Below, in pieces: positions 7,166-56,173 of a stretch of DNA of 64,000 nt (within the stretch, counting starts at the first letter, position 1; every line of letters begins with the position of its first letter). A program made the translations under genes and the position numbers. A model generated the notes under the pieces. It was not told the origin of the DNA and searched no databases. It saw only the letters and a program-made list of their open reading frames with translations. The stretch lies in the IMG/VR virus record IMGVR_UViG_3300032285_004054, positions 1-64,000 of that record; one strand, written 5' to 3'.

Positions 7166-7393
7166 ATGGCTACAATTAAGCATTTTGGCGGACAAGATTA
7201 CAAAGTCCTTCACAAAGGGAAGGAATACGGACCTATGTCTATAGAAGACGCTAGAGAGAAAGTAGCTGAAATTGAAGAAGGCGAACGTAACCTTACACCA
7301 GATGAGGTAGCAGCAGGATTTGCTGAAATGAGAAGAAAGTTAAATGGCGAAAGCTTCAGCCAATTTTTTAAATCACGTCAAGTAGACCTTTAA
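7166..7393 (+). CDS. hypothetical protein
   Basis: ORF preceded by ATAAGTA; convergent overlap with next gene. Confidence 0.7.
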   Translation: MATIKHFGGQDYKVLHKGKEYGPMSIEDAREKVAEIEEGERNLTPDEVAAGFAEMRRKLNGESFSQFFKSRQVDL

Positions 7394-7757
7394 AGCTGTC
7401 TCTTGTTTCAGGAGAAAGCATCTTCTCAAGAAAAGATTGCGCAGTTATATTCTGAACAGGTGATAGAGCTTCATTTGTAGCTTTAAATCTATTAAAGATA
7501 GCCCAGAGTATATCATCATATGAACCGTATGTACCATCTTTAAATACCATTTGTAGAACATTGTCTTCTTTCTTTAAAGAATCTTCGTAATCCGAATGTA
7601 CAGCATCTTTAAAGTTACACTTAGGTTGATTACTATAATGTAACGCTAAAACAATCTTATGATAGAATAGAGCTTTAACTTTAACATCGCCATACTTGTC
7701 TTTGTCAAGTGATACATCATCATCAAATGTAATAGTTAATAGGATAGGGTCTTTCAT
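7368..7757 (-). CDS. C-terminal-tag family protein 5
   Basis: Ends LSPETRDSFKGLLDVI. Confidence 0.8.
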   Translation of the reverse strand: MKDPILLTITFDDDVSLDKDKYGDVKVKALFYHKIVLALHYSNQPKCNFKDAVHSDYEDSLKKEDNVLQMVFKDGTYGSYDDILWAIFNRFKATNEALSPVQNITAQSFLEKMLSPETRDSFKGLLDVI

Positions 7758-8392
7758 TAGTCAAGTACGTCTAGTAAACCTCCAAATGCTTTAGCAGTAG
7801 GATCACTTAATTCATCTTTATAACTTTTATCAGTCATAGGGTAGATGTATCTAAAATTATCTGTTTTACCATTAGGGAACAATGTATGGTTCCAGCTTGT
7901 CTTCTTTTGTATGTCAACTGGGAAGCTATTTATGTTAAAATGCCTTGTATGAATAGGTTCAAAGAAGTATAGAGCATCATGATAGTTTATAAAGTTACCA
8001 CCTGTAAAGTATTCAATGTTCGTTTCAAGATCTTTTACTACAGCTAGGAAAGCTACTGTTGGTACTTTTGTTTTTTCAATACCTCTGACCTTAACAATAG
8101 GCCATAATTTTAATTGTAAGAACTTCCAATCATGTCTATAGATAGGAGTATTCTTATCGTAATCTTCGTAATCCTTATGTTTTGGATCTCTCATACGTAC
8201 CTGCTCAAATTGCAGCTGTGTAACTAATCTATAGATTAGTACTGCTTTTAATGCATCTAAAGATTTATGTTCAGTAAACGGCTTAAACGCTTGTTCGGTA
8301 TCTGATGACCAAACAGCAATACTCATAATACTATCAATTGTGCCTTGATAGTAATGACTCTTAATATCGTAATTTATATTGTTAGAGGACAT
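7757..8392 (-). CDS. C-terminal-tag family protein 4
   Basis: Ends LSDPTAKAFGGLLDVLD. Confidence 0.8.
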   Translation of the reverse strand: MSSNNINYDIKSHYYQGTIDSIMSIAVWSSDTEQAFKPFTEHKSLDALKAVLIYRLVTQLQFEQVRMRDPKHKDYEDYDKNTPIYRHDWKFLQLKLWPIVKVRGIEKTKVPTVAFLAVVKDLETNIEYFTGGNFINYHDALYFFEPIHTRHFNINSFPVDIQKKTSWNHTLFPNGKTDNFRYIYPMTDKSYKDELSDPTAKAFGGLLDVLD

Positions 8393-8780
8393 CTAATAAA
8401 CCTCCAAATGTTTCTTCAGTATCTTTTGAAAGAGACTTCTTTAGTATATAATTCTCTCTTTTTGCTAACGGCCACTCTTTATCGAGATATTCTTCAATTA
8501 TCTCTCTTTCTTCATAGTCTATAGGTTTACCTAGAACTCTATTACCGAACTCATCTTTTTCTAAATTGTAACAGCCTCCGTCATATCTGCGACCTCTGTC
8601 ATCTTCATCTTTCCATATGACTATATCTCGTTTACCGTCTAAGATTAGATACCAAGCCCAGTGCATGTTCTCAGGACCATCGCGATGCTTTTTAAGATCA
8701 ACAAATTCTATAGTAATACCAACAACATGATTGCCGCCATAACGATCTGTTGGGTATGTTGTTTTGTAAATATTACTCAT
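8382..8780 (-). CDS. C-terminal-tag family protein 3
   Basis: Ends LSKDTEETFGGLLDVL. Confidence 0.8.
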   Translation of the reverse strand: MSNIYKTTYPTDRYGGNHVVGITIEFVDLKKHRDGPENMHWAWYLILDGKRDIVIWKDEDDRGRRYDGGCYNLEKDEFGNRVLGKPIDYEEREIIEEYLDKEWPLAKRENYILKKSLSKDTEETFGGLLDVL

Positions 8781-9142
8781 ATAACGTCAAGTAGTCCTCC
8801 AAATGAATCTTTAGTTTTCTTAGACAGATGTTTCTCTATTTTATATTTTTCAATAGCTTTGTCAATTTGAGAGGATAATTCATCCAATGCACCAATATAA
8901 CCATCACCCTCATCTTTCATTCCTAAAACGTTTCTCCATTCTCCGTTTTGATATTTTGAATCAGTAGTCCAAGGCCATTCTCTAGTTTTGTTCCAAGTCA
9001 TCTTCAATCCATCAACTACAATATCGACAAGCATATCATCGGAGTAAGCCTGATTAGGTGAGTCTTCGTTGTAGTAGACATCACTCTTAATTTGTATATC
9101 GTACACTCTTTCTTTTGATTCAAAGAATTTCTTAAATGACAT
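8777..9142 (-). CDS. C-terminal-tag family protein 2 with capsid-targeting-like leader
   Basis: Starts MSFKKFFESK; ends LSKKTKDSFGGLLDVI. Confidence 0.8.
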   Translation of the reverse strand: MSFKKFFESKERVYDIQIKSDVYYNEDSPNQAYSDDMLVDIVVDGLKMTWNKTREWPWTTDSKYQNGEWRNVLGMKDEGDGYIGALDELSSQIDKAIEKYKIEKHLSKKTKDSFGGLLDVI

Positions 9143-9572
9143 CGATTAAACCTCCAAATGAATTTCTTGTATCTTTTGAGAGTGTTCTCTTTAGGTATTC
9201 ACTCTCTGGTTCTATTTTATAATCTTCATCTACTAACCCGTTCATTAAGTCTCTGTACTCTTCAGGAGCTACAAAGCGGGTAATCATATTCATAAATGTA
9301 GTGCTATCGCTTTTGCTGTCAAGCTTTATTTTTATAATCATTTTTCCATTGCCTATCTCATCCATGTCTATATTATTCACAACATCAATTCCTTTGATAT
9401 TATTACCGTAACCCTCCGGACCAGATCTAACAATATACTCAAAACGCTCAAATATATCTAGATTTGTTTTCTTTTGCCTCTCAGCTTCTTCTTCATTGAT
9501 ATACAATGTAACATAAACAACAGAGTCTAAAGACTCCGTCAGTAGAAGTTTCAATGCATGATCAAGATTCAT
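9132..9572 (-). CDS. C-terminal-tag family protein 1
   Basis: Starts MNLDHALKLLLTES; ends LSKDTRNSFGGLIDVI. Confidence 0.8.
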   Translation of the reverse strand: MNLDHALKLLLTESLDSVVYVTLYINEEEAERQKKTNLDIFERFEYIVRSGPEGYGNNIKGIDVVNNIDMDEIGNGKMIIKIKLDSKSDSTTFMNMITRFVAPEEYRDLMNGLVDEDYKIEPESEYLKRTLSKDTRNSFGGLIDVI

Positions 9573-23857: not shown

Positions 23858-24730
23858 ATGACTACTCTCATTAATAGTTATTCAATAGCTTCTCCGATTG
23901 GTATCGGTACTTATAACCCTAATAAAGCATTAACGGTTGTAGGTGATATATCTGCTACAGGTAATATATATAGTGCTGGTGGTAATGTAGGTGGAGGAAG
24001 CTTAACAGGTGCCATCACAGCTGTTAAGAGTAACAATGATGATCGCATAACAGCTACTACAACTAATGGAGCAGTTACTATTGATTTACCTACTACTGTT
24101 AAATTACAAAATCTTAATGTTGCAGGCACTTTTAATGTACCGGGTACTGCTAATTTTTATAACACTACTAATTTAAATGTTAGCAGTAATATTATTTACT
24201 TCGGTGAAGGTAACACCGGTAATGTTTTAGATTTAGCTCTTGTTGCCCATCTTACAGGAAATCTTAATAACGGTACACCTCGCTACCAGCATACAGGTTT
24301 AGCAAGACAAGCAGGTCAAAACTCGCCTGGTATTTGGACATTATTTTCAGGTCTTACATCTGAACCCGGTTCTAATAGCTCTGGTATTACTTGGACAGAT
24401 CCTTATCTTCAAGTTGATACATTAAGTGCAAACGTACTAGGTAATCTATCAGGTAATTATGTTACAGTTGGTACAGGTAATTCCGATCAATGGAATAGCG
24501 TTTATTCATCTGTTGCTAATACTTCAGGTAATTGGAATACTGTTTATTCATCTGTTGCTAATACTTCAGGTAATTGGAATACTGTTTATTCAACTTATCA
24601 AAATGCATCTGGTGCAAACGGTTTCGTAAAAAACGGTGGAGGTATAGCAAATGTTACTTCTATTACACAAGCTAATTACAACCAACTATCTCCACCAGAC
24701 CCTAATACTCTTTACATTATTTCGTCGTAA
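23858..24730 (+). CDS. tail-fibre proximal/adapter protein
   Basis: HTGL domain, WN.VY repeats (42-bp duplication at ~24500-24590), C-term PDPNTLYII. Confidence 0.8.
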   Translation: MTTLINSYSIASPIGIGTYNPNKALTVVGDISATGNIYSAGGNVGGGSLTGAITAVKSNNDDRITATTTNGAVTIDLPTTVKLQNLNVAGTFNVPGTANFYNTTNLNVSSNIIYFGEGNTGNVLDLALVAHLTGNLNNGTPRYQHTGLARQAGQNSPGIWTLFSGLTSEPGSNSSGITWTDPYLQVDTLSANVLGNLSGNYVTVGTGNSDQWNSVYSSVANTSGNWNTVYSSVANTSGNWNTVYSTYQNASGANGFVKNGGGIANVTSITQANYNQLSPPDPNTLYIISS

Positions 24731-35645: not shown

Positions 35646-36080
35646 TTACCAAGTCAGGGTATCAGGATCTAATACCTGTACCAATTCAATACCGAAGTCT
35701 TTAGCTATAGCATAAGGATCATAGTCCTCAGTAGCTTTGTATAGTTTTCTATAAACTATCTTCTTAACTCCGTAACTTGCTATTGTCTTTAGACAATCAT
35801 TACAAGGGGTATGAGTAACAGCAGCTAGGTAACATTCACCAGGCTTAACCATTCGGAAGCAATTAATTTCAGCATGAATAACTCTTTTATGCTTCTCTTC
35901 TCTATTGCTCCATTCAATCTCAACGCCCGGAGGAGCTCCGTTATAACCTAGGCTTGCTACGGTATGATCATGACGAAGAAGACAACAACCTACTTTAGTT
36001 CGAGGATCTTCTGAACGTAGAGCAGCAACTTCAGCTAAACGAAGAGCATACTCTTCCCAGCTAAGTCTTTCAGTTCTCAT
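35646..36080 (-). CDS. dCMP deaminase
   Basis: W.EY....A...A.RS.DP..KVG, GYNG.P.G, HAE.N, PCNDC. Confidence 0.9.
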   Translation of the reverse strand: MRTERLSWEEYALRLAEVAALRSEDPRTKVGCCLLRHDHTVASLGYNGAPPGVEIEWSNREEKHKRVIHAEINCFRMVKPGECYLAAVTHTPCNDCLKTIASYGVKKIVYRKLYKATEDYDPYAIAKDFGIELVQVLDPDTLTW

Positions 36081-36084
36081 ACGT

Positions 36085-36492
36085 TTATTTATCATAATAC
36101 GTGCCGTCACCTCCAGACCAAATAACCTTCTTAAACTCAAAATATCGAAGAAGATTCTCGCAAGACATACAAGGTTTAGCCATCGCTATGTTACCATTAC
36201 GATCATAACGAATATTAACTAAAGTACATTTCTTTGTATCTATATTTGTCTTACGTTTAAGCTTTAAGATAGCATTAAACTCTGAACATCTAAACTTCTG
36301 ATCTGAATAATCCTCACCTGTAATCTTAGATATCTTTCTGTTAACTAGATTAACAGGGTGGGTCTTTCTAGAGTTCGTACCAATAGAAATTAAACGATTC
36401 TTATTAAGAATAAAAGAGATATGCTGACAACGATTACCGTTATCTTCAACAAGAGACAAAGCAATTTCTTCTAATCGTTTATAATCAAGCAT
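36085..36492 (-). CDS. divergent deaminase-fold protein
   Basis: H...I....IS.G.N, CSE (in place of HAE), AKPCMSC. Confidence 0.75.
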   Translation of the reverse strand: MLDYKRLEEIALSLVEDNGNRCQHISFILNKNRLISIGTNSRKTHPVNLVNRKISKITGEDYSDQKFRCSEFNAILKLKRKTNIDTKKCTLVNIRYDRNGNIAMAKPCMSCENLLRYFEFKKVIWSGGDGTYYDK

Positions 36493-37099
36493 TACCGGTA
36501 AGTGTAACTGCTTCAGTATTATGTTGCAAGAAAATATTCCACTCCTCTATTTTATATCTGTTCTTAATATAGCTTGTCAGCGGTAAGTACTTTGGCTCGG
36601 TAGGTTCCTTTAGGAGTTTAAGATTAGCTTCCTCCGGTGTTCTATTAGCTTTCATAGCATTAATGTCTCTATGAGTTAGTACACAATTCTTCCAATCAGT
36701 CTTACCACCTCTTGAACGAGGTATAATATGATCAACGTTACCTGTTTTTGAATTAACCTTAACACCCGTATAAGCACATTTACCACCATCTCTGGCCCAA
36801 ATACCTTTCATAGAGAACTTCGGTCTCTTCTTCGGTACTTGATTATATTTACAGAGTACAATTATTTTAGGTACTTTAATATTACCTCGAACAGTCTTTA
36901 TGCATTCTTCGTCTTCATTTATATCGAGGTTAATCCATTCATTCCATTTACAAGGATACATATCGTCCTTGCCAAGAATATGCAGCCCTGTTGCAGAGCC
37001 AGAGTACATCATAGATAAAGCATCTGCTACTGACTTGACATGAATAGCCTGCCAATTACGGTTTAGTACTAAAACCGTTTCCCTGTCCAGTAAACTCAT
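36485..37099 (-). CDS. HNH endonuclease (McrA-like)
   Basis: VLVLN..W, RD...CAYTG, VDHIIPRSRGG...W.N.V, N..KANRTPEEA. Confidence 0.9.
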   Translation of the reverse strand: MSLLDRETVLVLNRNWQAIHVKSVADALSMMYSGSATGLHILGKDDMYPCKWNEWINLDINEDEECIKTVRGNIKVPKIIVLCKYNQVPKKRPKFSMKGIWARDGGKCAYTGVKVNSKTGNVDHIIPRSRGGKTDWKNCVLTHRDINAMKANRTPEEANLKLLKEPTEPKYLPLTSYIKNRYKIEEWNIFLQHNTEAVTLTGNA

Positions 37100-37944: not shown

Positions 37945-39933
37945 TTATAAAATACCTAAAAGGTCTTCAAAAGATCCTTTTGTTTCGTCAGACATATTAT
38001 CTAGTATGTCTAAGTCTTCTAACTCTTTCTTTATCTTTTCGTCTGAATCAAACTTAGTACTATCCCCGTCATATTTTAATCCTTCTTGACGTGCAATGCC
38101 TCTCAGTGTTGTAAGAGGGTTATTACTAAAATCATAATAAACACGATATGATTTATCATTATTGAGAAGTTTTTTAGGAGAACCTACAAGACTGGAGAGT
38201 TGATTGTTAGCTATATCTATCATCGAACCGCCTATCTCTTCTGGTAACCCTTCTAAAGATCTTAAATGGTTATTTGTTAAAGCTATATTACCGCCAATTG
38301 TACTTGGTGCACCTTTTACGCTTGTTAATGATTTACACTTTCTTACTACTAGATCACCTGTAATTGTTGATGGACAACCTTCTAGGCTTTGTAAACTAAT
38401 ACAATCATCAATATATATACCAGGTATAGTAGCAGGTAGACCTTTTAAACTTGCAAGGTTTTTACAGTTACCAATAATATATTTTGTATCATTCCTGCCA
38501 CGTACTCTAATTTCTTGAGTTATACCTGTTAAGTCAAATATACCTAAATTGTCTAGTCGTACGCTACCTAAACAAGACTGAGGTAAACCTTCTAAACTTT
38601 TTAATCTCATGCAATCAGCTATAAAAATACTACCTTTAACAGGAACAGAAGCTCCTTTTAAATCTGTTATCTTTAAATTTCTTAATTCAAGTCTATGAGT
38701 ACTATAAGCACTATCAGGTTCTGCTTCAGCACAAGTTGCAGGCATTCCTTTTAAGCTAGTTATATTTGTTTCTTTACCGTCTATATCTATAGTACCGGTA
38801 ACAGCCATAGGTAAGAACGATAAATCATTTAATTGTTGAAAAGGTGTTTGTGTAACAATTTTAGAATTTTCTCTATAGCCATCTTTAGCATCATTAACAT
38901 CAAAAATAAAACTACCATCAACAATATAATTTTTAAACGAATACGGATTACTAAGTCCTACTTCAAAGTATCTTACATCACCTTTAATAACTTTATTACC
39001 TCTTTCTTCAACTACACGGAAGACATTTTCAATTAGATACTCATCTGTAACTTTTGTTCTATTTATTTTTGTATGTTGATTATACGAAGCGTATACTTTT
39101 AACATCGTATCTTTTACTTTAGCGATACTTTGTTTTGTTACACCTAAATCTTCTGGAGCAAATAGTTCATCAGTTCTATTAACAACCGGAAAACGTATTA
39201 CATATTTTATAGGTACTAAAGATTCTAAAAGATAAGGTGTATTTGTATCTCCGTAATCTCCAATATATCTAGTAATTTTTAAAGTACCTTTTGGTTTAAG
39301 AGTCTTTTCAGGTAACCTATTTCTTCTCATGAAGACTAGCTTACCTGGCAGTATAGGTTCAAACCCAGTTTTATTCTTAATGCTATCGTCTATTGTGTAA
39401 TCTTTTGTAGCTAGAATTATATTAACCCATTGACCGTTTTTAGCTTTTACTTCTAAAGGTTGATCAAGCCATTTAAAACCTATAATAGGGTTTGTTATAA
39501 CCTGTTTAACAGCTTCTTCTATATCAGGTTTAGATTCATAGTCAGTAGGTACGTTAGCATTATTAGCTGCTTGTTTGAATCCATAATCATGTGGATCAAT
39601 ATCTACTGTAGGATCGGTATACTTCTTAGCTACTTGTAAGTCTTTAAAAGGACCGAAGATGAATTGACTATGAATAGGTACAACAGCTCCATCTCCGAAC
39701 TTAATTGCAAACTTGGAATAAGCTCCTGGTACATTTTTATAACCTACAACTTCACCTACTTGGTTAAGATAGGGAAGAGCTTTCTTAGAGTGATAAGATA
39801 GATACCCCATTCCAGGAGCATCTCTAACGACAACTATATTACCGTTATTAAACTTAGCACGAGGAGGAGGCGCGATGTAATCATCGACCTTAAAAACCGG
39901 TACTGCTTCTTCGATGTACTCCTTAAAGGACAT
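37945..39933 (-). CDS. LRR-like repeat protein with capsid-targeting-like leader and C-terminal tag
   Basis: MSFKEYIEEA; L.SL.G.P..I.G repeats; ends MSDETKGSFEDLLGIL. Confidence 0.85.
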   Translation of the reverse strand: MSFKEYIEEAVPVFKVDDYIAPPPRAKFNNGNIVVVRDAPGMGYLSYHSKKALPYLNQVGEVVGYKNVPGAYSKFAIKFGDGAVVPIHSQFIFGPFKDLQVAKKYTDPTVDIDPHDYGFKQAANNANVPTDYESKPDIEEAVKQVITNPIIGFKWLDQPLEVKAKNGQWVNIILATKDYTIDDSIKNKTGFEPILPGKLVFMRRNRLPEKTLKPKGTLKITRYIGDYGDTNTPYLLESLVPIKYVIRFPVVNRTDELFAPEDLGVTKQSIAKVKDTMLKVYASYNQHTKINRTKVTDEYLIENVFRVVEERGNKVIKGDVRYFEVGLSNPYSFKNYIVDGSFIFDVNDAKDGYRENSKIVTQTPFQQLNDLSFLPMAVTGTIDIDGKETNITSLKGMPATCAEAEPDSAYSTHRLELRNLKITDLKGASVPVKGSIFIADCMRLKSLEGLPQSCLGSVRLDNLGIFDLTGITQEIRVRGRNDTKYIIGNCKNLASLKGLPATIPGIYIDDCISLQSLEGCPSTITGDLVVRKCKSLTSVKGAPSTIGGNIALTNNHLRSLEGLPEEIGGSMIDIANNQLSSLVGSPKKLLNNDKSYRVYYDFSNNPLTTLRGIARQEGLKYDGDSTKFDSDEKIKKELEDLDILDNMSDETKGSFEDLLGIL

Positions 39934-39945
39934 ACATTATTTAGC

Positions 39946-40434
39946 TTACTTTACAGAATAAATCCGATAAAGAATTCTAACAGGATCCTCTGACTTATCT
40001 TCAGCAATTTCGTGTAGATGTTGCTTTGTAAACTTGTCAAAGGCATGCTTGTCGGCGTAGTCCTTAATAAATTGCTTTAAAGAGTTGACATCTATTTCAC
40101 GGAACTTAGAAGGTGAGAAGTTTGTGATATCAAGATTGAATGCATCATCAATCTCGTCTCCTAAATCACGAATAATGTTACGTTGAAGACCTGTATTAAA
40201 ATGAGAATATAACTTCTTTTCAGACTTAAAAGGTCTGTAAGGAGCTTCATCTTCGTAGTCTTCAACTGTAGCTGTAGGAAGTGCTGTTTCAAGTACAGCG
40301 TTAAAGCTAGGTGTATTTTCCTTTAGGATCTTGGCGTACTTAGATTCCTTAAGAATATTACGCTCTTCATCAGTAAGCTTCTTTCCTTTTAGGAAATAGT
40401 CTTCAGCAAGTCTTTTGAGTTCTTTTTTATTCAT
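39946..40434 (-). CDS. hypothetical protein (probable internal head protein)
   Basis: Repeated ILKE/VLE motifs; in late block. Confidence 0.65.
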   Translation of the reverse strand: MNKKELKRLAEDYFLKGKKLTDEERNILKESKYAKILKENTPSFNAVLETALPTATVEDYEDEAPYRPFKSEKKLYSHFNTGLQRNIIRDLGDEIDDAFNLDITNFSPSKFREIDVNSLKQFIKDYADKHAFDKFTKQHLHEIAEDKSEDPVRILYRIYSVK

Positions 40435-40438
40435 ATGA

Positions 40439-41929
40439 TTATTCTCCTCCCTTCATGATCTTAACGACCTTAGGTAGTGTAGTCTTTAAGAACTTCTCCT
40501 TAATAGCAGGATCGTAATTCCAGTGTTGGAGGAATTCCATAGTACCTGCAAATTGCTTTGTAGGTAGATCTGTTCTAAGGTTAGTCCAAAGAATGGTTAC
40601 CCATTCAGGGTGTAGATGATTACTAAGTGTAGCTAATCCTGCGAGTATATCCAGGTCATCCTGTGTAGGTTCTTTACCTCCTGCTACATCATTTGTAACA
40701 ACTCTAACCTTATTAATGAAGAAAGATACGAGAGCATTAAGCTTGTTAATGTTAGACTTATCAACATATGAATCAGGATTAGCTAACATATGCTTAATAT
40801 CAAATGAACGAAGATGCTGAATGAATTCAACGAACTTAGCACCCCACTTCCAACCACACTTAGCAGAAGCATATGTATTGATAAGCTTGTAGAGACCTAC
40901 TTCATTAGCTCTACCGTTTTGCTCATCTTCGTAATACTTCTCGTAAATCTTCTTTAAGATCTTTGTTAAAGCTTTAAAGCTACGAGGTGAAGGAGCGCCA
41001 CTATTAGCTTTTGGCTTATAGATGAAATTCTCTTCAGGAGCTGATTTAACGAAAGCAACAATACGAGGATCAATCTTAGCGTGTTCGGCCCACTTAAGCC
41101 ATTCATGTGGATCAGCTACTAGTACACCGGCTGTAAAACGAGATGTTAAAGCTTCTTCAAGTTCATCATCTCTATCTGTTAGGTTACCAGCACCCATTAC
41201 AGCGATTTCACTACCTAATTGTTCGTCACCGATTTGACGTTCTTCAGAGTTAACAACGGAATAAAGAGACTGACGTACGTCTTGACGACCTTGATTAATT
41301 TCGTCAAAGAAAAGAATACCATCAGCTTCAGGACGAGTTACAAAAGCAATCCAGTCCATCTTTTTATACTGTAAGAAGTCTTCAGGTGATGTTAGATTAG
41401 GAATACCTGAGAAGTCAGAAGGTTCCAGACGCTTTGTTCTTACGTCAACAAGTACGAAATATTGTGTAGGGTTCTTGATATACTCAGCCTTTTGAGCTGC
41501 ACTTGATCTATTCCATTCAGCGAACTTTTTACCTTTTTGCTTAGATATAGCATCACCGATATTCTTAATAATAGCACTCTTACCGATACCAGGTTCACCG
41601 TATATAAGTAATGGTTCTTTTGTATCGTAGGATAAATTGACCATCATGTAGAAGGTCTTATAATCCATCTCAGGGAGATCTGTCTCCATATAAGGACGGA
41701 TAGCAGGGTCATCCATCGCACGAATATTGTCGAGATCAGGATTATCAACAGGTAGCTTAGGAGGATTTTGATTTAAGCTCTGTACTAAACCGGCTCCTTG
41801 TTGAGCAGTTTGTGCTGCTTGTGGATTTGAAGGAGCAGGAGCTGCAGCAGCTGCTTTTGGTTTAGGAGCTTCATTTAGTATGTTACTATAAGCTTCCTGT
41901 AAAGACATAATATCCTTAAAAAGTTTCAT
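40439..41929 (-). CDS. MoxR-type AAA+ ATPase
   Basis: GEPGIGKS, EP.DF.G.P, ILFFDEIN, AGN, AL.SRF, SPRS; TATAAATA upstream. Confidence 0.9.
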   Translation of the reverse strand: MKLFKDIMSLQEAYSNILNEAPKPKAAAAAPAPSNPQAAQTAQQGAGLVQSLNQNPPKLPVDNPDLDNIRAMDDPAIRPYMETDLPEMDYKTFYMMVNLSYDTKEPLLIYGEPGIGKSAIIKNIGDAISKQKGKKFAEWNRSSAAQKAEYIKNPTQYFVLVDVRTKRLEPSDFSGIPNLTSPEDFLQYKKMDWIAFVTRPEADGILFFDEINQGRQDVRQSLYSVVNSEERQIGDEQLGSEIAVMGAGNLTDRDDELEEALTSRFTAGVLVADPHEWLKWAEHAKIDPRIVAFVKSAPEENFIYKPKANSGAPSPRSFKALTKILKKIYEKYYEDEQNGRANEVGLYKLINTYASAKCGWKWGAKFVEFIQHLRSFDIKHMLANPDSYVDKSNINKLNALVSFFINKVRVVTNDVAGGKEPTQDDLDILAGLATLSNHLHPEWVTILWTNLRTDLPTKQFAGTMEFLQHWNYDPAIKEKFLKTTLPKVVKIMKGGE

Positions 41930-41945
41930 ATTAATCGTATATTAT

Positions 41946-43796
41946 TTATACGTCGACAGGGAATACTTTGCCCTTTTTCTCTAAAATGTCGTATCTACCA
42001 TCACCATTAACCATGAAAATTAGATTCTTTTGAGGGTTCTTAACTTCAGGTAATTGAGGATTATCTTCAACGTAACCGTCAGTGAAGTAAATGATATTAT
42101 CGACCTTTGTTATTTTTAAATGATCTAGTAATTTCTTAACACTTGACATTAAAGTGCCGCCTTCCTTAACAGGGAGCTGTTTAACCTTGGCCATAATAGC
42201 AGGTACAGATGATTTTTTACTATTTACAATCTCGTGATAATAAGCATTAACATTCCAAAGAATGAGCATTAATTCTACTTCCTTAAACTGTTTTAATAAC
42301 TGGAAAATATAACCAATATAGATGCTAAGCACTTCATCGTTAATAGAACCACTTGTATCGATAGCAATAATGGTTTTAACCTTCTCTTGCTCTTTTATAG
42401 TGCGTCCTTGATAAACAAGATTAGATGCTCCTCTACTACCTGTAGCAGCAGCCATTCTAATATTAGGCTTGGACATATCAGATCTTAGCTGATTAGAAGG
42501 TTTAATAACATCCTTTAAGATTTGTCTCCAATCTACTTTAACCTTTTCTTCACCGAACTTATTACGAAAACCGCCTTCAGCATTACCTCTGTTAGAGGCC
42601 TGTTGCTTAGCTCGATCAACCTTATTCCTCATATCGGCTTTCTTTTGAGCTTCAGTTGTCCCTGGTGCAGGCTGGTTCTTATTGTAGATAGGGTTATCTG
42701 AAGGCATATTAACTTGTCCCGGAGATCCCTTACCTGCTGTAATATGCTTATCGAGTTGTTCTTGTTTACCTGCTAGTGATTCTTTGAATGTAGTATCGTC
42801 TTTTAAGCCTTGGTCTTCTTTTTGTTGACCGCCTTGTCCCTGACCTTTACCTTGTTGTTGCTGTTGATCGTCTTGTCCTTGGCCCTGACCTTCTTGTTCG
42901 TTGCCTTGTTGACCTTGAGCTTGTTGATCACCTTGCCCAGGCTGTGGTTGCCCGCTTTGACCTTGACCAGGCTGTGGTTGCCCGCTTTGACCTTGACCTT
43001 GTTGAGAGTTGCCTTGTTGATTCTGATTCTGGTTACCTTTCTTCTTCTCTTGTTCGTTGTCGAGCTTCTCAAATACCTTGTAAAGCTCTTCAGCTGTCAT
43101 GTCGGTAATGTCTGTACCTGCTACCTCCATAGCATGTTCCATAGGAGGTAGTACCCAACGACCACCTTCCTGTAGCGGTAGACAGCCAATAGAAGGAAGT
43201 TTATAACCAGACTCAAGAATATCTCTATTCATGACGAAGTCAGTAGCAACGTTCCAGAGTGTATGATCTTTGCGACCTTTTCTAAAGAATGTATTATTAG
43301 CAATGTGAAGAGTCTCGTGTAATAGAACACCAATAACTTCTTCGTAAGAAAGCTGCTTTAAAGCAAAATTGGGATTAATATAGATATTCCCGTAATCATC
43401 TACACCCATTGTAGGTACATCGTATGTAACTACTGTTTTAAGATTCTGTAATAGAATACCATAGTAAGGAGCGCGCTTATAAAGTTCGTAACGTGCTCTT
43501 GTTAGAAGGTTATCGAGTCTTGTAAGCTCATCTGTAGAAAGTTCTTGATACTGATTCTCTTGAGAGTTAAGCGCGACATCGAGCTGTCTTTCAATTTCAT
43601 CAATCTGCTCATCAGACATCCCTTGTTTCTTTAATTCCTTTCTCTGCTTATCAGACATCTTATAAGGCTCACCAGGCTTTCTAGGGTTAGGATTTTCGTT
43701 AACCTCGGTTAATAGCCTACTTTGAGGTAATCTAGCTTCAAAAATCAATCTAGAATAGACACTCGAAAGCTGTTTGTCTTCTTTTCTATAGTACAT
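41946..43796 (-). CDS. metallopeptidase + VWA domain protein (DUF2201-type)
   Basis: T.GVD..G.IY.NP.F, HETLH, WN.A.D; Q/G linker; IDTSGSI, GGT, FTDG MIDAS. Confidence 0.9.
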   Translation of the reverse strand: MYYRKEDKQLSSVYSRLIFEARLPQSRLLTEVNENPNPRKPGEPYKMSDKQRKELKKQGMSDEQIDEIERQLDVALNSQENQYQELSTDELTRLDNLLTRARYELYKRAPYYGILLQNLKTVVTYDVPTMGVDDYGNIYINPNFALKQLSYEEVIGVLLHETLHIANNTFFRKGRKDHTLWNVATDFVMNRDILESGYKLPSIGCLPLQEGGRWVLPPMEHAMEVAGTDITDMTAEELYKVFEKLDNEQEKKKGNQNQNQQGNSQQGQGQSGQPQPGQGQSGQPQPGQGDQQAQGQQGNEQEGQGQGQDDQQQQQGKGQGQGGQQKEDQGLKDDTTFKESLAGKQEQLDKHITAGKGSPGQVNMPSDNPIYNKNQPAPGTTEAQKKADMRNKVDRAKQQASNRGNAEGGFRNKFGEEKVKVDWRQILKDVIKPSNQLRSDMSKPNIRMAAATGSRGASNLVYQGRTIKEQEKVKTIIAIDTSGSINDEVLSIYIGYIFQLLKQFKEVELMLILWNVNAYYHEIVNSKKSSVPAIMAKVKQLPVKEGGTLMSSVKKLLDHLKITKVDNIIYFTDGYVEDNPQLPEVKNPQKNLIFMVNGDGRYDILEKKGKVFPVDV

Positions 43797-43820
43797 GAAT
43801 ATATTATTTATTAAAAAAGC

Positions 43821-43895
43821 TGGAGCATCGGGTGAGAATCGAACTCACTATAAAGGGTTTTGCAGACCCTTGCCTGGCCAGTTAGCTTCCGATGC
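43821..43895 (-). tRNA. tRNA-Cys(GCA)
   Basis: Cloverleaf: GCATCGG/CCGATGC-U-CCA, anticodon arm AGGGT-CTGCAAA-ACCCT, TTCGA loop. Confidence 0.92.
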
Positions 43896-44039: not shown

Positions 44040-44130
44040 TGGAGGAAGCGGAGGGATTCGAACCCTCGGAGGCGATAAAACCTCTGCAGTTTAGTAAACT
44101 GCTGCAATAGGCCAGCTCTGCCACACTTCC
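44040..44130 (-). tRNA. tRNA-Ser(ACT), long variable arm
   Basis: GGAAGTG/CGCTTCC-U-CCA; anticodon arm GCAGT-TTACTAA-ACTGC; variable stem GAGG/CCTC. Confidence 0.85.
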
Positions 44131-45651: not shown

Positions 45652-46258
45652 ATCTAATTATATTGCACCAGGTGCTCAATCTAGGCGCTAAATTAAACTT
45701 TATTTAACCTCAATACTAATATTGTGTACCTCCGGTTTCACAACAGGTACCTTAACTCGTAGTAACCCGTCTGTGTATGTTGATGAGATGTTCTTAACGT
45801 CCGTATTGTCATTAAGCGTGAAGGACAATTGTCCCTTCCTACGGCTAATGCCTTTACGATGGAAGTGTATAGTCTCATCATGTTCGACCTCTTCCTTATT
45901 AACTGCAATCAAGAGTTTACCTTCCTTGACTGTTACGTTAATATTTTCCTTTCCTACGCCAGCCAATGCTACTTCGATGTAGTAGGTGACCGGATTACCG
46001 TCTGGATCGGTTTCTGATACGATGTTATAAGGATAGACTGCATTTGGAATATCAAATGCTTTATCGAAGTCCTTAAAGACATCACTTAGCCAGCTTTCAT
46101 TAAACAGAGCTGGGAGGTGGCTGTACCCCGCGCCCTGGGCAGGAACGAGCCTGCCGACTGTGTATGGTGTTATTGTTGTTGTCATATTTTTTCTCCTTTA
46201 TTAAGCGAGTTAATATGTTTGCTTTAGGTCTGATTGAGCACCTGAGCAAATATAATTA
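45652..46258. repeat. imperfect inverted repeat pair flanking hsp20
   Basis: Perfect core CAGGTGCTCAATC (45669-45681) / GATTGAGCACCTG (46232-46244), extending imperfectly to ~30 bp. Confidence 0.8.
45700..46185 (-). CDS. small heat shock protein Hsp20
   Basis: YPYNI, Y.IE.ALAG..K..I.V....L.I, GIS.R....F.L, DGLL.V.VP; AAGGAG SD. Confidence 0.93.
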   Translation of the reverse strand: MTTTITPYTVGRLVPAQGAGYSHLPALFNESWLSDVFKDFDKAFDIPNAVYPYNIVSETDPDGNPVTYYIEVALAGVGKENINVTVKEGKLLIAVNKEEVEHDETIHFHRKGISRRKGQLSFTLNDNTDVKNISSTYTDGLLRVKVPVVKPEVHNISIEVK

Positions 46259-46289: not shown

Positions 46290-46373
46290 TGGAGCCTGAG
46301 GTGAGATTCGAACTCACGGAGCTTGCGCGTCGGTTTACAAAACCGATCCTATTGGCCACTAAGGGACTCAGGC
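46290..46373 (-). tRNA. tRNA-Thr(TGT) with extended variable arm
   Basis: GCCTGAG/CTCAGGC-U-CCA; TCGGT-TTTGTAA-ACCGA; 12-nt variable region; TTGACT-17-TAATAT promoter upstream. Confidence 0.88.
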
Positions 46374-49177: not shown

Positions 49178-50137
49178 CTAGATTATATCTATTAACCCCT
49201 TAAAAGTATTTTTTGTCTTCGGTGTTAATTTGTTAATAATGGACTTCTTTAGAACATATCTCTTCATAGGTTCTTTATAAGTGTAATGTTTAGCAAAGTA
49301 TTTACAGAAGTCATCCTCTGAATAATCTCTTATTTGTCCTTTTTCTTTTTCTATTTTTAAAACGTTTAACGAGTTATTATATACATCATCTAAAAGCTTC
49401 TTATCTGTCTGCATATTATCTAGTATTCGATCCCAGACATCAAAATTGTCTTCGTCATCGTCTTCTTTGTAATCGTCAATCATACATACTATAGCATCTT
49501 CTATAGCTAGCTTAAACACTGCATCGCTTACAGAATTTTCTACAAGAATTGAACCGACTATACTGTTAAAGCTTTCTTTCATAGGTATCTTGCTAAACTC
49601 TTGATCTAGATAATTACTTATTTCTTCATCTGATTTAAAAAGACTAGATTGTAATCTAATAGCTATACCACCTTTATTGTTCCAAGCATCTACATAAGGA
49701 GGGAAATCATCGATAAGAACATTCGGTGTACCATCTTCGTTTATAGCGTAAATTGATTTGTTTTGAGGATACTCAACACCTTTAAAATACTTTCCGTACT
49801 TCGGTATAATATGCTTCTTAATCCATTCACTTTTTCCCTTCTTGCATTCTTCTATATCAATACTCGCAGGATGAGAACAAATCTTAAAAGAACCAAACTT
49901 CTCTATAACTTTTCTTATTAAAGCGTCATTAGTAGGGTATGGTTCAAGGTTTGCAAATACCTCGTAAACATCACCTAGATGATTGTGAAACTCTTGTTTA
50001 TCTTTCCAGATCTTTCTAGCTTCTTGCTTCTCTTCTGGTGTAATATCTTTATAATCTTTATGATATAACTTATGCGCTATTGTATCGAACAAGTTTGCAA
50101 GCAAACCGTCCATATCAAGATAGCAAATAGGGTTCAT
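49178..50137 (-). CDS. HAD 5'(3')-nucleotidase-like domain fused to tagged C-terminal domain
   Basis: YLDMDGLLA, K..W, K..YA, LIDD, W...GG; ends LTPKTKNTFKGLIDII. Confidence 0.85.
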   Translation of the reverse strand: MNPICYLDMDGLLANLFDTIAHKLYHKDYKDITPEEKQEARKIWKDKQEFHNHLGDVYEVFANLEPYPTNDALIRKVIEKFGSFKICSHPASIDIEECKKGKSEWIKKHIIPKYGKYFKGVEYPQNKSIYAINEDGTPNVLIDDFPPYVDAWNNKGGIAIRLQSSLFKSDEEISNYLDQEFSKIPMKESFNSIVGSILVENSVSDAVFKLAIEDAIVCMIDDYKEDDDEDNFDVWDRILDNMQTDKKLLDDVYNNSLNVLKIEKEKGQIRDYSEDDFCKYFAKHYTYKEPMKRYVLKKSIINKLTPKTKNTFKGLIDII

Positions 50138-50378: not shown

Positions 50379-50416
50379 AGTTTAATATTTATTCTTTTAC
50401 TCATAAATATAAGTAG

Positions 50417-55537: not shown

Positions 55538-56173
55538 TTATATTAATATATAAACCGTATTAGGGTCAATTGCAAAACCTCCTGCATTATAAGTTACATA
55601 CGGTATTGTTACTATGTTTTTAACAGTACCGACACCGGTAGTATTAACAAGTTCAGGTTTACTAACTACTGTATTATTATATGTACTATTCCAGTAATTA
55701 GCTGATAGACCTGTTAGCTTTGTTGAGTCTAAATTAAAGAGTTTTGACCCATCACCGGAAACATTAGCAACAAGTGTATCAATAACCTTATTATTAGAAG
55801 CTACTGAATTAGCGCTCGGTTCAGTAGCCATACTACTAAACAGATACCATACCCCTGGGTTACCAATGTTATGAGTTCTCAGGAGACCTGTATGACCGTA
55901 GACGCTGTTAACTACATTGTGACCGACAAAGCCTATATCAAAGTTGTCTCCGGGATTACTCTGTGAAAGATATATAACAGGATTGGCAACACTCAAATAG
56001 CTTGTTGTAACAGTATATGATGATCCTTGCAAATAAAGAGAACCACCTACTGTTAAGTCACTGCTAACTGATAAACTACCAGTTAATATACCCCCTGTTA
56101 AAGGCAATGACAGTGTACCGCTACCAGTAGTATAATCAAAGTTACCTGTAAATGGATTGAACTTATACGGCAT
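55538..56173 (-). CDS. short tail-fibre adapter protein
   Basis: MPYKFNPFTGNFD; HTGL domain; DPNTVYILI. Confidence 0.8.
   Translation of the reverse strand: MPYKFNPFTGNFDYTTGSGTLSLPLTGGILTGSLSVSSDLTVGGSLYLQGSSYTVTTSYLSVANPVIYLSQSNPGDNFDIGFVGHNVVNSVYGHTGLLRTHNIGNPGVWYLFSSMATEPSANSVASNNKVIDTLVANVSGDGSKLFNLDSTKLTGLSANYWNSTYNNTVVSKPELVNTTGVGTVKNIVTIPYVTYNAGGFAIDPNTVYILI

What the first reader, a model, noticed from the sequence alone, without database searches (positions are those of the whole stretch)
37945..43796. Late MoxR AAA+/VWA-peptidase pair with head-protein leaders beside a doubly tagged LRR protein
The VWA-metallopeptidase, the MoxR ATPase and the LRR-like gene each have their own TAAATA box and an N-terminal extension with (I/L)xE sites not expected in cellular homologues. 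The LRR protein also bears the C-terminal tag. MoxR/VWA pairs are chaperone-adaptor systems, and VWA MIDAS sites bind acidic residues; the tag has a near-invariant Asp and a free C-terminus. Hypothesis: this pair is the reader or unfoldase for tagged cargo, packaged in the virion or acting at assembly.
Basis: inference. Interest (0 to 1): 0.72.

Follow-up and report, generated by a model that had tools for sequence, protein, structure and literature searches.

The report
Late phage MoxR–VWA module beside tagged cargo
An uncultured 218-kb T4-like phage makes, late in infection, a three-protein chaperone set (zinc peptidase-VWA adaptor, MoxR ATPase, small helper) that carries head-targeting-like leaders and sits, in many related phages, next to genes for proteins sharing a short acidic C-terminal tail, so it may handle that tagged cargo, though binding is unproven.

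Summary
On the minus strand, 37945-43796 encodes a DUF2201_N zincin peptidase fused to a VWA domain (HExxH and a full MIDAS), an AAA_5/MoxR ATPase, an overlooked 162-aa helical protein, and a 662-aa protein. That last protein has a T4-CTS-like N-terminus, a 22-residue LRR-like solenoid and the genome's C-terminal tag.

The phage is a far-T4 jumbo phage with gp21-type protease, gp23, gp20 and a gp55 homologue. TAAATA lies 2-21 nt (mostly 4-14) before the ATG of 84/314 genes, these three included.

A bare (I/L)xE is not above chance (p=0.27). However, the ATPase's N-terminal extension defines one well-supported clade and ends in a conserved (L/I)xE|A(A)P.

New findings:
- The small protein is fused to MoxR in three other cluster representatives.
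- The module lies beside C-terminally tagged genes in at least ten loci (four tag types), including three found from the tag side.
- Tags differ between lineages but are uniform within a genome. They share a hydrophobic-Asp-x-hydrophobic-COOH core.

The peptidase-vWA/MoxR pair was already described in jumbo phages (Iyer 2021). The leader-bearing, tag-linked form is a new variant. Tag reading by the VWA is plausible but untested: the one complex prediction gave no answer, and two relatives have the module without clear tags.

The parts
41946..43796 (-). P0004, 616 aa: N-terminal leader, DUF2201_N zincin metallopeptidase, Q/G-rich linker (residues 246-330), VWA domain
   Evidence: Pfam DUF2201_N 98 bits and weak VWA_3/VWA_2/DUF2201 hits. 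phrog_1314. Alignment with relatives is A6.
43805..43810 (-). TAAATA late box, 8 nt before the P0004 ATG
43737..43796 (-). P0004 leader, residues 1-20, ending IFE|A. A leader of this type is conserved in the orthologues.
43305..43319 (-). HETLH zinc-binding motif of the peptidase, conserved in all 7 relatives aligned
42075..42359 (-). MIDAS residues of the VWA domain: DTSGS (42345-42359), GGT (42153-42164), TDG (42075-42086)
40439..41929 (-). P0003, 496 aa: N-extended MoxR/AAA_5 ATPase
   Evidence: Pfam AAA_5 and bpMoxR over cut-off. phrog_1297. Closest solved relative by profile is midasin. Forms a clade of N-extended MoxRs.
41943..41950 (-). TATAAATA late box, 13 nt before the P0003 ATG, overlapping the end of P0004
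41630..41929 (-). N-terminal extension of the ATPase (residues 1-100): leader with LQE12|A and LNE20|AP, a Pro/Ala-rich stretch, then a conserved QQ..V..LNQ block
41300..41599 (-). Walker A GEPGIGKS (41576-41599) and Walker B LFFDE (41300-41314)
39946..40434 (-). P0002, 162 aa: all-helical accessory protein of the module. It has no box of its own and has a GGAGGAG Shine-Dalgarno.
   Evidence: Conserved directly after MoxR in 12 loci (A7). Fused to the MoxR C-terminus in P0193, P0200 and P0204. AF2 pLDDT 72.
37945..39933 (-). P0001, 662 aa: CTS-like leader, SH3/KOW-like domain, conserved middle region, LRR-like solenoid, C-terminal tag
39938..39943 (-). TAAATA box, 4 nt before the P0001 ATG. 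The spacing is at the short end of the genome's range.
39907..39933 (-). P0001 leader MSFKEYIEE|A. It resembles the T4 capsid targeting sequence and the N-terminus of this phage's own scaffold protein.
38098..38751 (-). LRR-like repeat region (residues ~395-612, ~22-residue period). It is absent from three orthologues.
37948..37995 (-). C-terminal tag of P0001 (...MSDETKGSFEDLLGIL*)
49178..50137 (-). Tagged 319-aa protein with an NT5C-type 5'-nucleotidase domain, 5.4 kb upstream of the module
7368..9572 (-). Tandem array of five small tagged proteins in the window. Nineteen further tagged genes lie outside the array: 17 beyond the window at genome 194210-210714, plus P0001 and the 49178-50137 gene within it.

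Best explanation
The locus is a late-expressed chaperone module of a far-T4 jumbo phage. It has three proteins: a zincin-peptidase/VWA adaptor, an N-extended MoxR (AAA_5) ATPase, and a small helical protein that acts as a detachable C-terminal domain of the ATPase.

Proposed mechanism:
1. The adaptor and the ATPase carry N-terminal propeptides of the T4 type, ending in (L/I)xE|A.
2. These propeptides most likely bring both proteins into the prohead core, where the gp21-type protease trims them.
3. There, or just before, the module handles a class of internal-protein-like cargo that shares an acidic C-terminal tail with the core hydrophobic-Asp-x-hydrophobic-COOH. This cargo comprises the neighbouring LRR-like protein and about 23 mostly small proteins.
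4. The most likely contact is the tag's Asp or terminal carboxylate on the Mg2+ of the VWA MIDAS, as in integrin-LDV or Rea1-MIDAS recognition.
5. The ATPase ring supplies the force to load, arrange or release the cargo. The peptidase may trim it.

Shown: gene identities and intact catalytic motifs; the late boxes; the clade-specific extension; the MoxR/P0002 fusions; the conserved linkage with tagged genes.

Inferred: cleavage of the leaders; location in the head; MIDAS-tag binding; the direction of the work.
For: Identity and intact motifs.

Late expression: the position-specific TAAATA box and a gp55 homologue.

Head context: the genome encodes Peptidase_S77, a gp22-like scaffold, gp23 and gp20. 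T4 gp21 cuts after L/I-x-E, and the first 10 residues of IPIII (MKTYQEFIAE) suffice for head targeting (PMC9026906; PMC8442874). P0001 (MSFKEYIEE|A), the scaffold (MNFKEILKD...), the protease (MGLKFLVE|D) and the ATPase (MKLFKDIMSLQE|A) all share that pattern.

ATPase extension: it is restricted to one clade with 100/99 support. Its (L/I)xE|A(A)P site is kept in most members.

Synteny: peptidase-VWA / MoxR / P0002-like / tagged gene(s) in that order in L086, L087, L089, L091, L092, L093, L008 and L010; L009 has the pair inside its tag array but no detected P0002-like gene.

Tags: uniform within a genome and different between genomes. Examples are FGGLLDVL, F.ELIDEL, TWEDILG, DDELG.LDV, EAGIDIDI and VMDAI.

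Enrichment: C-terminal families within 10 kb occur in 9/18 N-extended loci against 6/44 short-type loci (p=0.007).

Fusions: P0002-like domains are fused to MoxR in three cluster representatives.

Precedents: a virion MoxR plus VWA partner in ATV (PMC4124505). Iyer 2021 proposed a virion-assembly role for this pair. The Rea1-MIDAS/ligand complexes resemble integrin-ligand complexes (PMC6624252 abstract).
Against: - No binding evidence: the complex job gave no answer.
- A bare (I/L)xE is not enriched in late genes.
- There are no proteomic data, because no cultured relative exists. The best phage-isolate hits are about 25% identical and lack the extension.
- All tag-linked modules lie in one clade, so linkage could be inherited synteny within a late gene block.
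- G002 (complete genome) and L014 have the four-gene module without a clear tag family.
- Most tagged proteins have their own leader and so would not need a loader.
- When the VWA half is a separate ORF, it has no leader.
- The box of P0001 is only 4 nt from its ATG.
Confidence: 0.35

Rival explanations
1. The module is a general virion-assembly chaperone and processing peptidase, as proposed for the same pair in group 2.2 jumbo phages. It acts on structural proteins and has no special relation to the tags. The tagged genes are simply neighbours in a late block of head-internal protein genes.
For: Iyer et al. 2021 describe the pair and propose this role. In an Asteriusvirus-like coliphage the pair sits at the end of a structural gene block, with no tagged neighbours noted in the record's annotation. 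G002 and L014 have the module without clear tags. All tag-linked cases fall in one clade.
Against: The linkage survives inversion of the tagged gene, fusion and splitting of the adaptor, relocation beside the MCP and scaffold genes (L009), and complete turnover of the tag sequence. Loci found from the tag side always had the pair adjacent. The tags keep an Asp-centred core suited to a MIDAS.
Confidence: 0.3
2. The module and the tagged proteins are co-packaged ejection proteins. The ATPase-adaptor set works after injection into the next host. There it refolds or assembles the tagged effectors, which must pass unfolded through the tail, or it attacks host targets.
For: Leaders of the T4 internal-protein type occur on both the module and the cargo. 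T4 internal proteins and Alt are ejected and act in host take-over (PMC9026906; PMC3012670). The tagged set includes an LRR-like protein and a nucleotidase-like enzyme, which look more like effectors than building blocks.
Against: A hexameric ATPase would itself have to be ejected and reassembled. There are no data on virion content. The VWA half lacks a leader where it is a separate ORF.
Confidence: 0.15
3. The N-terminal extensions are not protease-cleaved head-targeting leaders. The module is a cytoplasmic MoxR-VWA maturation system, for example for metal or cofactor insertion or complex remodelling, as with NorQD, CbbQO or RavA-ViaA. It serves one or more phage enzymes.
For: (I/L)xE alone is no better than chance. 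MoxR pairs in other phages lie among non-structural genes (0305phi8-36). In N4-like genomes the ATPase homologue (annotated 'N4 gp24-like') has no N-terminal extension in the match, which starts at query residue 108. One tagged protein is a nucleotidase-like enzyme.
Against: The leaders match those of the phage's own scaffold and protease and the T4 CTS. The site is conserved as (L/I)xE|A(A)P across 32-81% identity. The genes carry late boxes like structural genes.
Confidence: 0.12
4. The C-terminal tags are sliding-clamp-binding tails, like those of T4 gp43, gp33 and gp55. On this reading the tagged proteins are recruited to the clamp, not to the MoxR-VWA module.
For: The DNA polymerase of this phage ends ...TDLFDLLS*, which loosely resembles ...SFEDLLGIL*.
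Against: The polymerase tail is conserved in G000, G001 and G002 (TDLFDLLS, TDLFNLFS, TDLIQLFS). The tags of the same genomes are unrelated to each other: FGGLLDVL, EAGIDIDI, and none clear.
Confidence: 0.03

Closest known systems
MoxR AAA+ / metallopeptidase-vWA pair of group 2.2 (T4-related) jumbo phages (Iyer, Anantharaman, Krishnan, Burroughs, Aravind 2021, PMC7824862)
   Same: The same two families in the same architecture: an N-terminal zincin peptidase fused to vWA, next to a MoxR ATPase. The setting is a large T4-related phage, and the proposed role is in virion assembly or processing.
   Different: The ATPase here belongs to a separate clade with an N-terminal extension of 60-137 residues before Walker A (about 110 here). 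Both proteins carry CTS-like leaders behind late boxes. A third conserved protein (P0002-like), sometimes fused to MoxR, is part of the module. The module is linked to families of C-terminally tagged proteins. None of these points is in the passages of that paper that I retrieved by searching for MoxR and vWA.
ATV p618 (MoxR) and p892 (VWA), Acidianus two-tailed virus
   Same: A viral MoxR ATPase that is a virion component and binds a VWA partner and several virion proteins. It is assigned a chaperone role in virion morphogenesis (PMC4124505).
   Different: That is an archaeal spindle virus with extracellular tail growth. It has no peptidase domain, no gp21-type propeptides and no reported client tag. 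Virion location here is only inferred.
Rea1/midasin MIDAS domain with the UBL domains of Rsa4/Ytm1, and integrin I-domain recognition of LDV-type motifs
   Same: An AAA_5-type motor works through a MIDAS. According to the PMC6624252 abstract, the MIDAS-ligand complexes resemble integrin-ligand complexes. From my own knowledge of these systems, not a passage read here, a ligand acidic side chain completes the metal coordination. The profile of this ATPase clade finds midasin as its best solved relative. The phage tags have a Leu/Ile-Asp-x-hydrophobic core like LDV.
   Different: Those are eukaryotic systems. The acidic residue there sits in a folded domain or an internal loop, not at a free C-terminus. 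Binding here is untested.
T4 internal proteins (IPI-III, Alt) with the capsid targeting sequence and gp21 processing
   Same: Diverse, fast-evolving small proteins in arrays share only a short N-terminal signal ending in (L/I)xE. They occur in a phage with a gp21-type protease and gp22-type scaffold.
   Different: T4 has no shared C-terminal tag on these proteins. From my knowledge of T4, not checked here, it also has no MoxR-VWA module. Here the cargo is doubly marked and an ATPase-adaptor set carries the same kind of leader.
Encapsulin cargo-loading peptides (recalled from the literature, not looked up here)
   Same: A short C-terminal peptide on unrelated cargo proteins directs them to one partner inside an HK97-fold shell.
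   Different: Encapsulin peptides bind the shell protein directly, without an ATPase. No evidence here points to the capsid protein as the receptor.

Membership tests
MoxR-type AAA+ ATPase (Pfam AAA_5 / bpMoxR) | Sequence match to the family models above the curated cut-offs | tested here: met
   AAA_5 32.4 bits (cut-off 22). bpMoxR 29.9 bits (cut-off 27). The clade profile finds midasin AAA_5 modules at E=4e-18.
MoxR-type AAA+ ATPase (Pfam AAA_5 / bpMoxR) | Intact Walker A, Walker B, sensor 1, Arg finger and sensor 2 | tested here: met
   Invariant across 25 sequences: G111, G114, G116, K117, D209, E210, N249, R264, R316.
MoxR-type AAA+ ATPase (Pfam AAA_5 / bpMoxR) | Cognate VWA-domain gene adjacent | tested here: met
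   P0004 lies immediately upstream. The pair is adjacent in every relative examined.
MoxR-type AAA+ ATPase (Pfam AAA_5 / bpMoxR) | Hexameric ring with ATPase and chaperone activity | not testable with these tools
   Needs purified protein.
DUF2201_N metallopeptidase + VWA (DUF2201) adaptor | DUF2201_N match and HExxH | tested here: met
   98 bits against a cut-off of 23.2. HETLH is conserved in 7 of 7 relatives.
DUF2201_N metallopeptidase + VWA (DUF2201) adaptor | VWA fold with a complete MIDAS (DxSxS...T...D) | tested here: met
   The Pfam VWA hits in P0004 are below cut-off (19.6, 19.0 and 16.8 bits). However, DTSGS, GGT and TDG are present and conserved in all seven VWA-containing sequences aligned (three fused proteins and four separate VWA halves). 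Relatives carry precomputed PF09967 hits.
T4-type head propeptide (CTS / gp21 substrate) | Genome encodes a gp21-type (Peptidase_S77) prohead protease and a gp22-type scaffold | tested here: met
   Peptidase_S77 101 bits. T4_CASP weak, 21.7 bits. gp23 and gp20 strong.
T4-type head propeptide (CTS / gp21 substrate) | N-terminal (L/I)xE site, above chance | tested here: inconclusive
   The sites are present. The bare motif is not enriched in late-box genes (p=0.27). Supporting points: conservation of (L/I)xE|A(A)P in the ATPase clade, enrichment of Ala at P1' (9 of about 32 sites against 6% elsewhere), and likeness to the T4 CTS and to this phage's own scaffold and protease N-termini.
T4-type head propeptide (CTS / gp21 substrate) | Actual cleavage and presence in proheads | not testable with these tools
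   The phage is uncultured and no proteome exists.
T4-type late promoter | TATAAATA-like box positioned upstream of late genes, plus a gp55-type sigma factor | tested here: met
   84/314 ORFs have TAAATA 2-21 nt (mostly 4-14) before the ATG, including the structural genes. A gp55 homologue is found at E=2.4e-7. Transcription starts were not mapped.
Leucine-rich repeat proteins | Match to an LRR family model | tested here: not met
   No Pfam or PHROG hit for P0001.
Leucine-rich repeat proteins | Curved solenoid of 20-30-residue repeats, each with one beta strand | tested here: inconclusive
   The AF2 model has strands every ~22 residues, with pLDDT 78-90 over residues 490-600 but an overall mean of 56. 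The top Foldseek PDB hits are LRR proteins (LRRC8A, TLRs, SlrP, SspH1) at E of 0.01 or worse.

The most novel reading that the evidence does not exclude
A clade of T4-related phages has a dedicated, ATP-driven sorting or handling system for capsid-internal cargo. A short C-terminal address of the form hydrophobic-Asp-x-hydrophobic-COOH sits on dozens of unrelated proteins. The MIDAS of a peptidase-VWA adaptor reads it, and the adaptor is coupled to a MoxR ring that is itself targeted to the prohead core. Tag and reader co-evolve within each genome.
Probability: 0.25. Interest if true: 0.8.

Novelty: new variant of a known kind. Interest (0 to 1): 0.62.

Why it matters
How large phages choose, load and later deploy the many non-structural proteins they carry in their heads is largely unknown beyond the 10-residue T4 targeting sequence.

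If this module reads a C-terminal tag, it would be the first receptor-and-address system for phage head cargo. It would also be the first client motif known for any phage MoxR-VWA pair, a chaperone class whose substrates are mostly unknown.

It would offer a second, C-terminal handle for packaging foreign proteins into T4-type capsids. It would also give a simple sequence rule for predicting ejected effectors in uncultured jumbo phages.

Even if the tag link fails, three results stand as annotation gains:
- a third module component, shown by gene fusion;
- a leader-bearing MoxR clade;
- a 24-member tagged family.

Tried and rejected
- blastn of the region against phage isolates found nothing. 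tblastn gave only about 25% identical, extension-less homologues.
- Pfam and PHROGs gave nothing for P0001 or P0002.
- The protein-atlas look-ups gave no usable lead for P0002. For P0001 they gave only an SH3/YorP-like hint for residues 25-98.
- The AF2 model of P0002 (pLDDT 72, all-helical) had no Foldseek PDB match below E=3.
- The complex prediction used the VWA domain, the peptidase domain and P0002 against a 117-aa tagged protein. The result was no answer (score 0.01, mark 0.32). It counts neither for nor against binding.
- Enrichment of a bare [LI]xE at residues 7-24 in late-box genes was not significant.
- A narrow leader profile was circular and added little beyond linking P0001 with the scaffold N-terminus.
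- A profile scan of IMG/VR with all 27 tagged proteins failed because no stretch was conserved enough. A closer subset found only a second fragment of the same phage.
- The sliding-clamp-tail idea for the tags was rejected. Polymerase tails are conserved where tags are not.
- A gp21 site just before the tag, which would imply C-terminal propeptide removal as in T4 Alt, is not consistently present in alignment A2.
- P0002's own 'LAE' is probably not a leader. It lies in a confident helix and aligns with internal sequence in the MoxR fusions.
- Pfam on ten tagged proteins found only an NT5C domain in one.
- The contexts of the three MoxR/P0002 fusions lie on short contigs and showed no clear tags.

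Full report
**What is there**

The window is the first 64 kb of a 218,400-bp IMG/VR virus record rated complete. The finding's span, 37945-43796, holds four co-directional minus-strand ORFs.

- P0004 (41946-43796, 616 aa) has a DUF2201_N putative metallopeptidase domain (98 bits), a Q/G-rich linker and a VWA domain.
- P0003 (40439-41929, 496 aa) matches AAA_5 and bpMoxR above their cut-offs.
- P0002 (39946-40434, 162 aa) and P0001 (37945-39933, 662 aa) match no Pfam or PHROG family.
- HETLH, the MIDAS set DTSGS...GGT...TDG, Walker A and Walker B are all intact. They are conserved in relatives.

**What phage this is**

The genome encodes:
- a gp23-type capsid protein, a gp20-type portal, a gp21-type prohead protease (Peptidase_S77) and a weak gp22-type scaffold, plus gp32 and gp44;
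- a gp55 homologue.

Its capsid protein is only about 34% identical to those of cyanophages. No cultured phage shares DNA with the region. It is therefore a distant, uncultured member of the T4 superfamily. Its relatives come from what appear, by the contig names, to be lake metagenomes; I did not check the sample records.

**Late boxes**

TAAATA is under-represented in the genome as a whole: 279 copies against about 434 expected. Yet 84 of 314 ORFs have it within 28 nt of the ATG (spacer 2-21 nt, mode 6 nt). Sheath, baseplate, fibre, scaffold and protease genes are among them.

- P0004 has the box 8 nt before its ATG.
- P0003 has a full TATAAATA 13 nt before its ATG.
- P0001 has the box 4 nt before its ATG.
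- P0002 has none, but has a GGAGGAG ribosome-binding site.

The 4-nt spacing of P0001 is at the short edge of the range and may not work as a separate promoter.

**Leaders**

T4 gp21 cuts after L/I-x-E. The first ten residues of IPIII, MKTYQEFIAE, are enough to send a protein into the prohead core (PMC9026906; PMC8442874).

P0001 starts MSFKEYIEE|A and the ATPase starts MKLFKDIMSLQE|A...LNE|AP. The peptidase-VWA has ...SRLIFE|A at residue 20. The phage's own scaffold (MNFKEILKD...LITE|E) and protease (MGLKFLVE|D) start the same way.

The motif by itself is weak evidence. A bare [LI]xE ending at residues 7-24 occurs in 29/84 late-box ORFs and 64/230 others (p=0.27).

The comparative evidence is stronger:
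- About 20 ATPase homologues at 32-81% identity share the roughly 85-100-residue extension. In most it ends its first segment with (L/I)xE|A(A)P. Homologues of 370-390 aa and cellular MoxRs start directly at the AAA+ core.
- Walker A begins at residue 60-137 in this group against 23-45 in ordinary phage MoxRs.
- In a maximum-likelihood tree, the N-extended proteins form one clade with 100/99 support.
- The leader of the peptidase-VWA is likewise kept in its orthologues.

**The third component**

A P0002-like gene of 145-167 aa follows the ATPase in twelve loci (A7). A profile search of 1.84 billion representative proteins finds about 100 clusters. Nearly all are stand-alone proteins of 110-190 aa (most 140-170). 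Three are MoxR ATPases with this domain fused to their C-terminus: P0193, P0200 and P0204. Such a fusion is the classical sign that the two proteins work as one unit. The AF2 model is all-helical (pLDDT 72) and has no PDB fold match.

**The tag**

Twenty-four ORFs of this genome end in a shared module of about 25 residues, ...LS.dT+dsFGGLLDV[LI]*. Four groups carry it:
- P0001 (variant ...SFEDLLGIL*);
- a 319-aa protein with an NT5C nucleotidase domain at 49178-50137;
- five tandem genes at 7368-9572;
- seventeen genes near 194-211 kb.

The bodies of these proteins are mostly unrelated to each other. The shared piece is therefore a tag, not a family signature.

**Linkage of module and tags**

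Starting from the ATPase, relatives L086 (213.8 kb contig, 81% identity), L087/L088 and L089 all show the same order. It runs peptidase-VWA (fused or as two ORFs), MoxR, P0002-like, a P0001-like tagged gene on either strand, then (in L087/L088 and L089) an array of small tagged genes; L086 instead has one more tagged gene upstream.

Starting from the tag family instead, three further contigs were examined: L091 (201.7 kb), L092 (197.7 kb) and L093. In each, the pair lay directly beside the tagged genes.

Within each genome the tags are nearly uniform. Between genomes they differ: FGGLLDV[LI], TFG.L[IV]D[ED]L, FEEL[IL][DN]EL and TWEDIL[GSD].

A de novo search for shared C-termini then found unrelated-looking tags next to the module in more distant lineages:
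- seven proteins of 159-1188 aa ending ...KGSKEAG[IV][DE]IDI* in G001/L010;
- seven ending ...KDDELG.LD[VI]* in L009, where the ATPase sits inside the array next to the scaffold and capsid genes;
- two ending ...PSL..VMDAI* in L008.

All keep a hydrophobic-Asp-x-hydrophobic end at or within one to two residues of the free C-terminus.

By a crude count, C-terminal families within 10 kb occur in 9 of 18 N-extended loci against 6 of 44 ordinary ones (p=0.007). For families of three or more the figures are 7/18 against 3/44 (p=0.004).

**Limits of that evidence**

- All tag-linked loci lie in one MoxR clade. The cases are not independent, and phage late-gene blocks are often syntenic.
- G002, a complete 225.8-kb relative with a Peptidase_S77 gene, and L014 carry the four-gene module but no clear tag family. 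They have only single flanking proteins with acidic-hydrophobic ends.
- Where the VWA half is a separate ORF it has no leader.
- The single complex prediction gave no answer.

**Mechanism**

The best-supported reading is a late MoxR/VWA-peptidase/P0002 chaperone module that is targeted to the prohead core and handles the tagged, internal-protein-like cargo.

MIDAS sites bind a ligand carboxylate that completes the metal's coordination. This is established knowledge of integrin I-domains, recalled rather than read here. LDV is a listed integrin recognition motif, and the Rea1-MIDAS/UBL complexes are described as integrin-ligand-like (PMC6624252 abstract). The profile of this ATPase clade finds midasin as its nearest solved relative. 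The tag core resembles an LDV motif.

I put the full statement at 0.35. The rivals are:
- a general assembly and processing role without tag specificity (0.30);
- action after ejection into the next host (0.15);
- a purely cytoplasmic maturation system (0.12);
- the tags as clamp-binding tails, which is disfavoured. The polymerase tail is conserved across three genomes whose tags differ.

**Relation to what is known**

The pair itself is not new. Iyer et al. 2021 reported a MoxR ATPase with a metallopeptidase-vWA co-chaperone in group 2.2 jumbo phages and proposed virion assembly with peptidolytic processing. ATV has a virion MoxR with a VWA partner.

Four things are new here:
- the N-extended, leader-bearing clade under late promoters;
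- the third component and its fusions to MoxR;
- the recurrent linkage with C-terminally tagged proteins;
- the within-genome uniformity and between-genome turnover of the tag.

I therefore class it as a new variant of a known kind, of moderate to high interest, with the key step (tag binding) still open.

Noticed in passing
whole genome; e.g. window 43797-43810, 50379-50416: The late TAAATA box sits so close to the ATG (mode 6 nt, range 2-21) and is so rarely followed by a Shine-Dalgarno that promoter-proximal late mRNAs must be leaderless or nearly so. Internal operon genes such as P0002 do have GGAGG-type sites.
   Followed up: partly
window 7368-9572; genome 194210-199008 and 207383-210714: There are 24 ORFs with the shared C-terminal tag, mostly small orphans in tandem arrays with overlapping stop and start codons. 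Many also begin M[SYN]F[KN].[FL]..E like the T4 capsid targeting sequence.
   Followed up: partly
L087 8184-9978; L089 7604-9983; L091 4546-6223; L092 4478-6578; also L006, L011, L014: In many relatives the peptidase and VWA halves are two ORFs that abut (stop and ATG 1-2 nt apart). In L087 they are in different frames (my arithmetic; the others were not checked). They are fused in G000, L086, L093, L010 and L008. This could be a genuine split or a programmed frameshift. It was not examined.
   Followed up: no
window 43821-43895, 44040-44130, 46290-46373 (all minus strand): tRNA-Cys(GCA), a tRNA-Ser with anticodon ACT as called by ARAGORN, and tRNA-Thr(TGT) lie just upstream of the module. The tRNA-Cys ends 25 nt before the P0004 ATG.
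   Followed up: no
genome 159642-161441 (minus strand); G001 121909-123720; G002 101736-103556: The C-terminal tail of the DNA polymerase is conserved as TDLFDLLS, TDLFNLFS and TDLIQLFS across three divergent lineages. It is a likely sliding-clamp-binding tail.
   Followed up: partly
window 23858-24730, 55538-56173, 56618-60160: Three fibre-like proteins share a second C-terminal motif (...DPNT[LV]YI[IL][SIV]*). Two of them, 55538-56173 and 56618-60160, also share the N-terminal MPY.FNPFTGNFD. This is probably a fibre assembly or attachment module.
   Followed up: no
window 49178-50137 (minus strand): One tagged protein has an NT5C-type 5'-deoxynucleotidase domain. An enzyme of this kind would be an unusual head cargo.
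   Followed up: partly
window 35646-37099; L014 7410-8406; L121 5221-6217: A dCMP-deaminase-like gene and a roughly 200-aa HNH-like gene lie beside the module in G000, L014 and L121. This shows a wider conserved neighbourhood.
   Followed up: no
L086 5807-6289; window 45700-46185: An Hsp20-family small heat-shock protein gene lies a few kb from the module in the 81%-identical relative. By N-terminal likeness, not an alignment, the window ORF at 45700-46185 looks like its counterpart. It is another chaperone in the same region.
   Followed up: no
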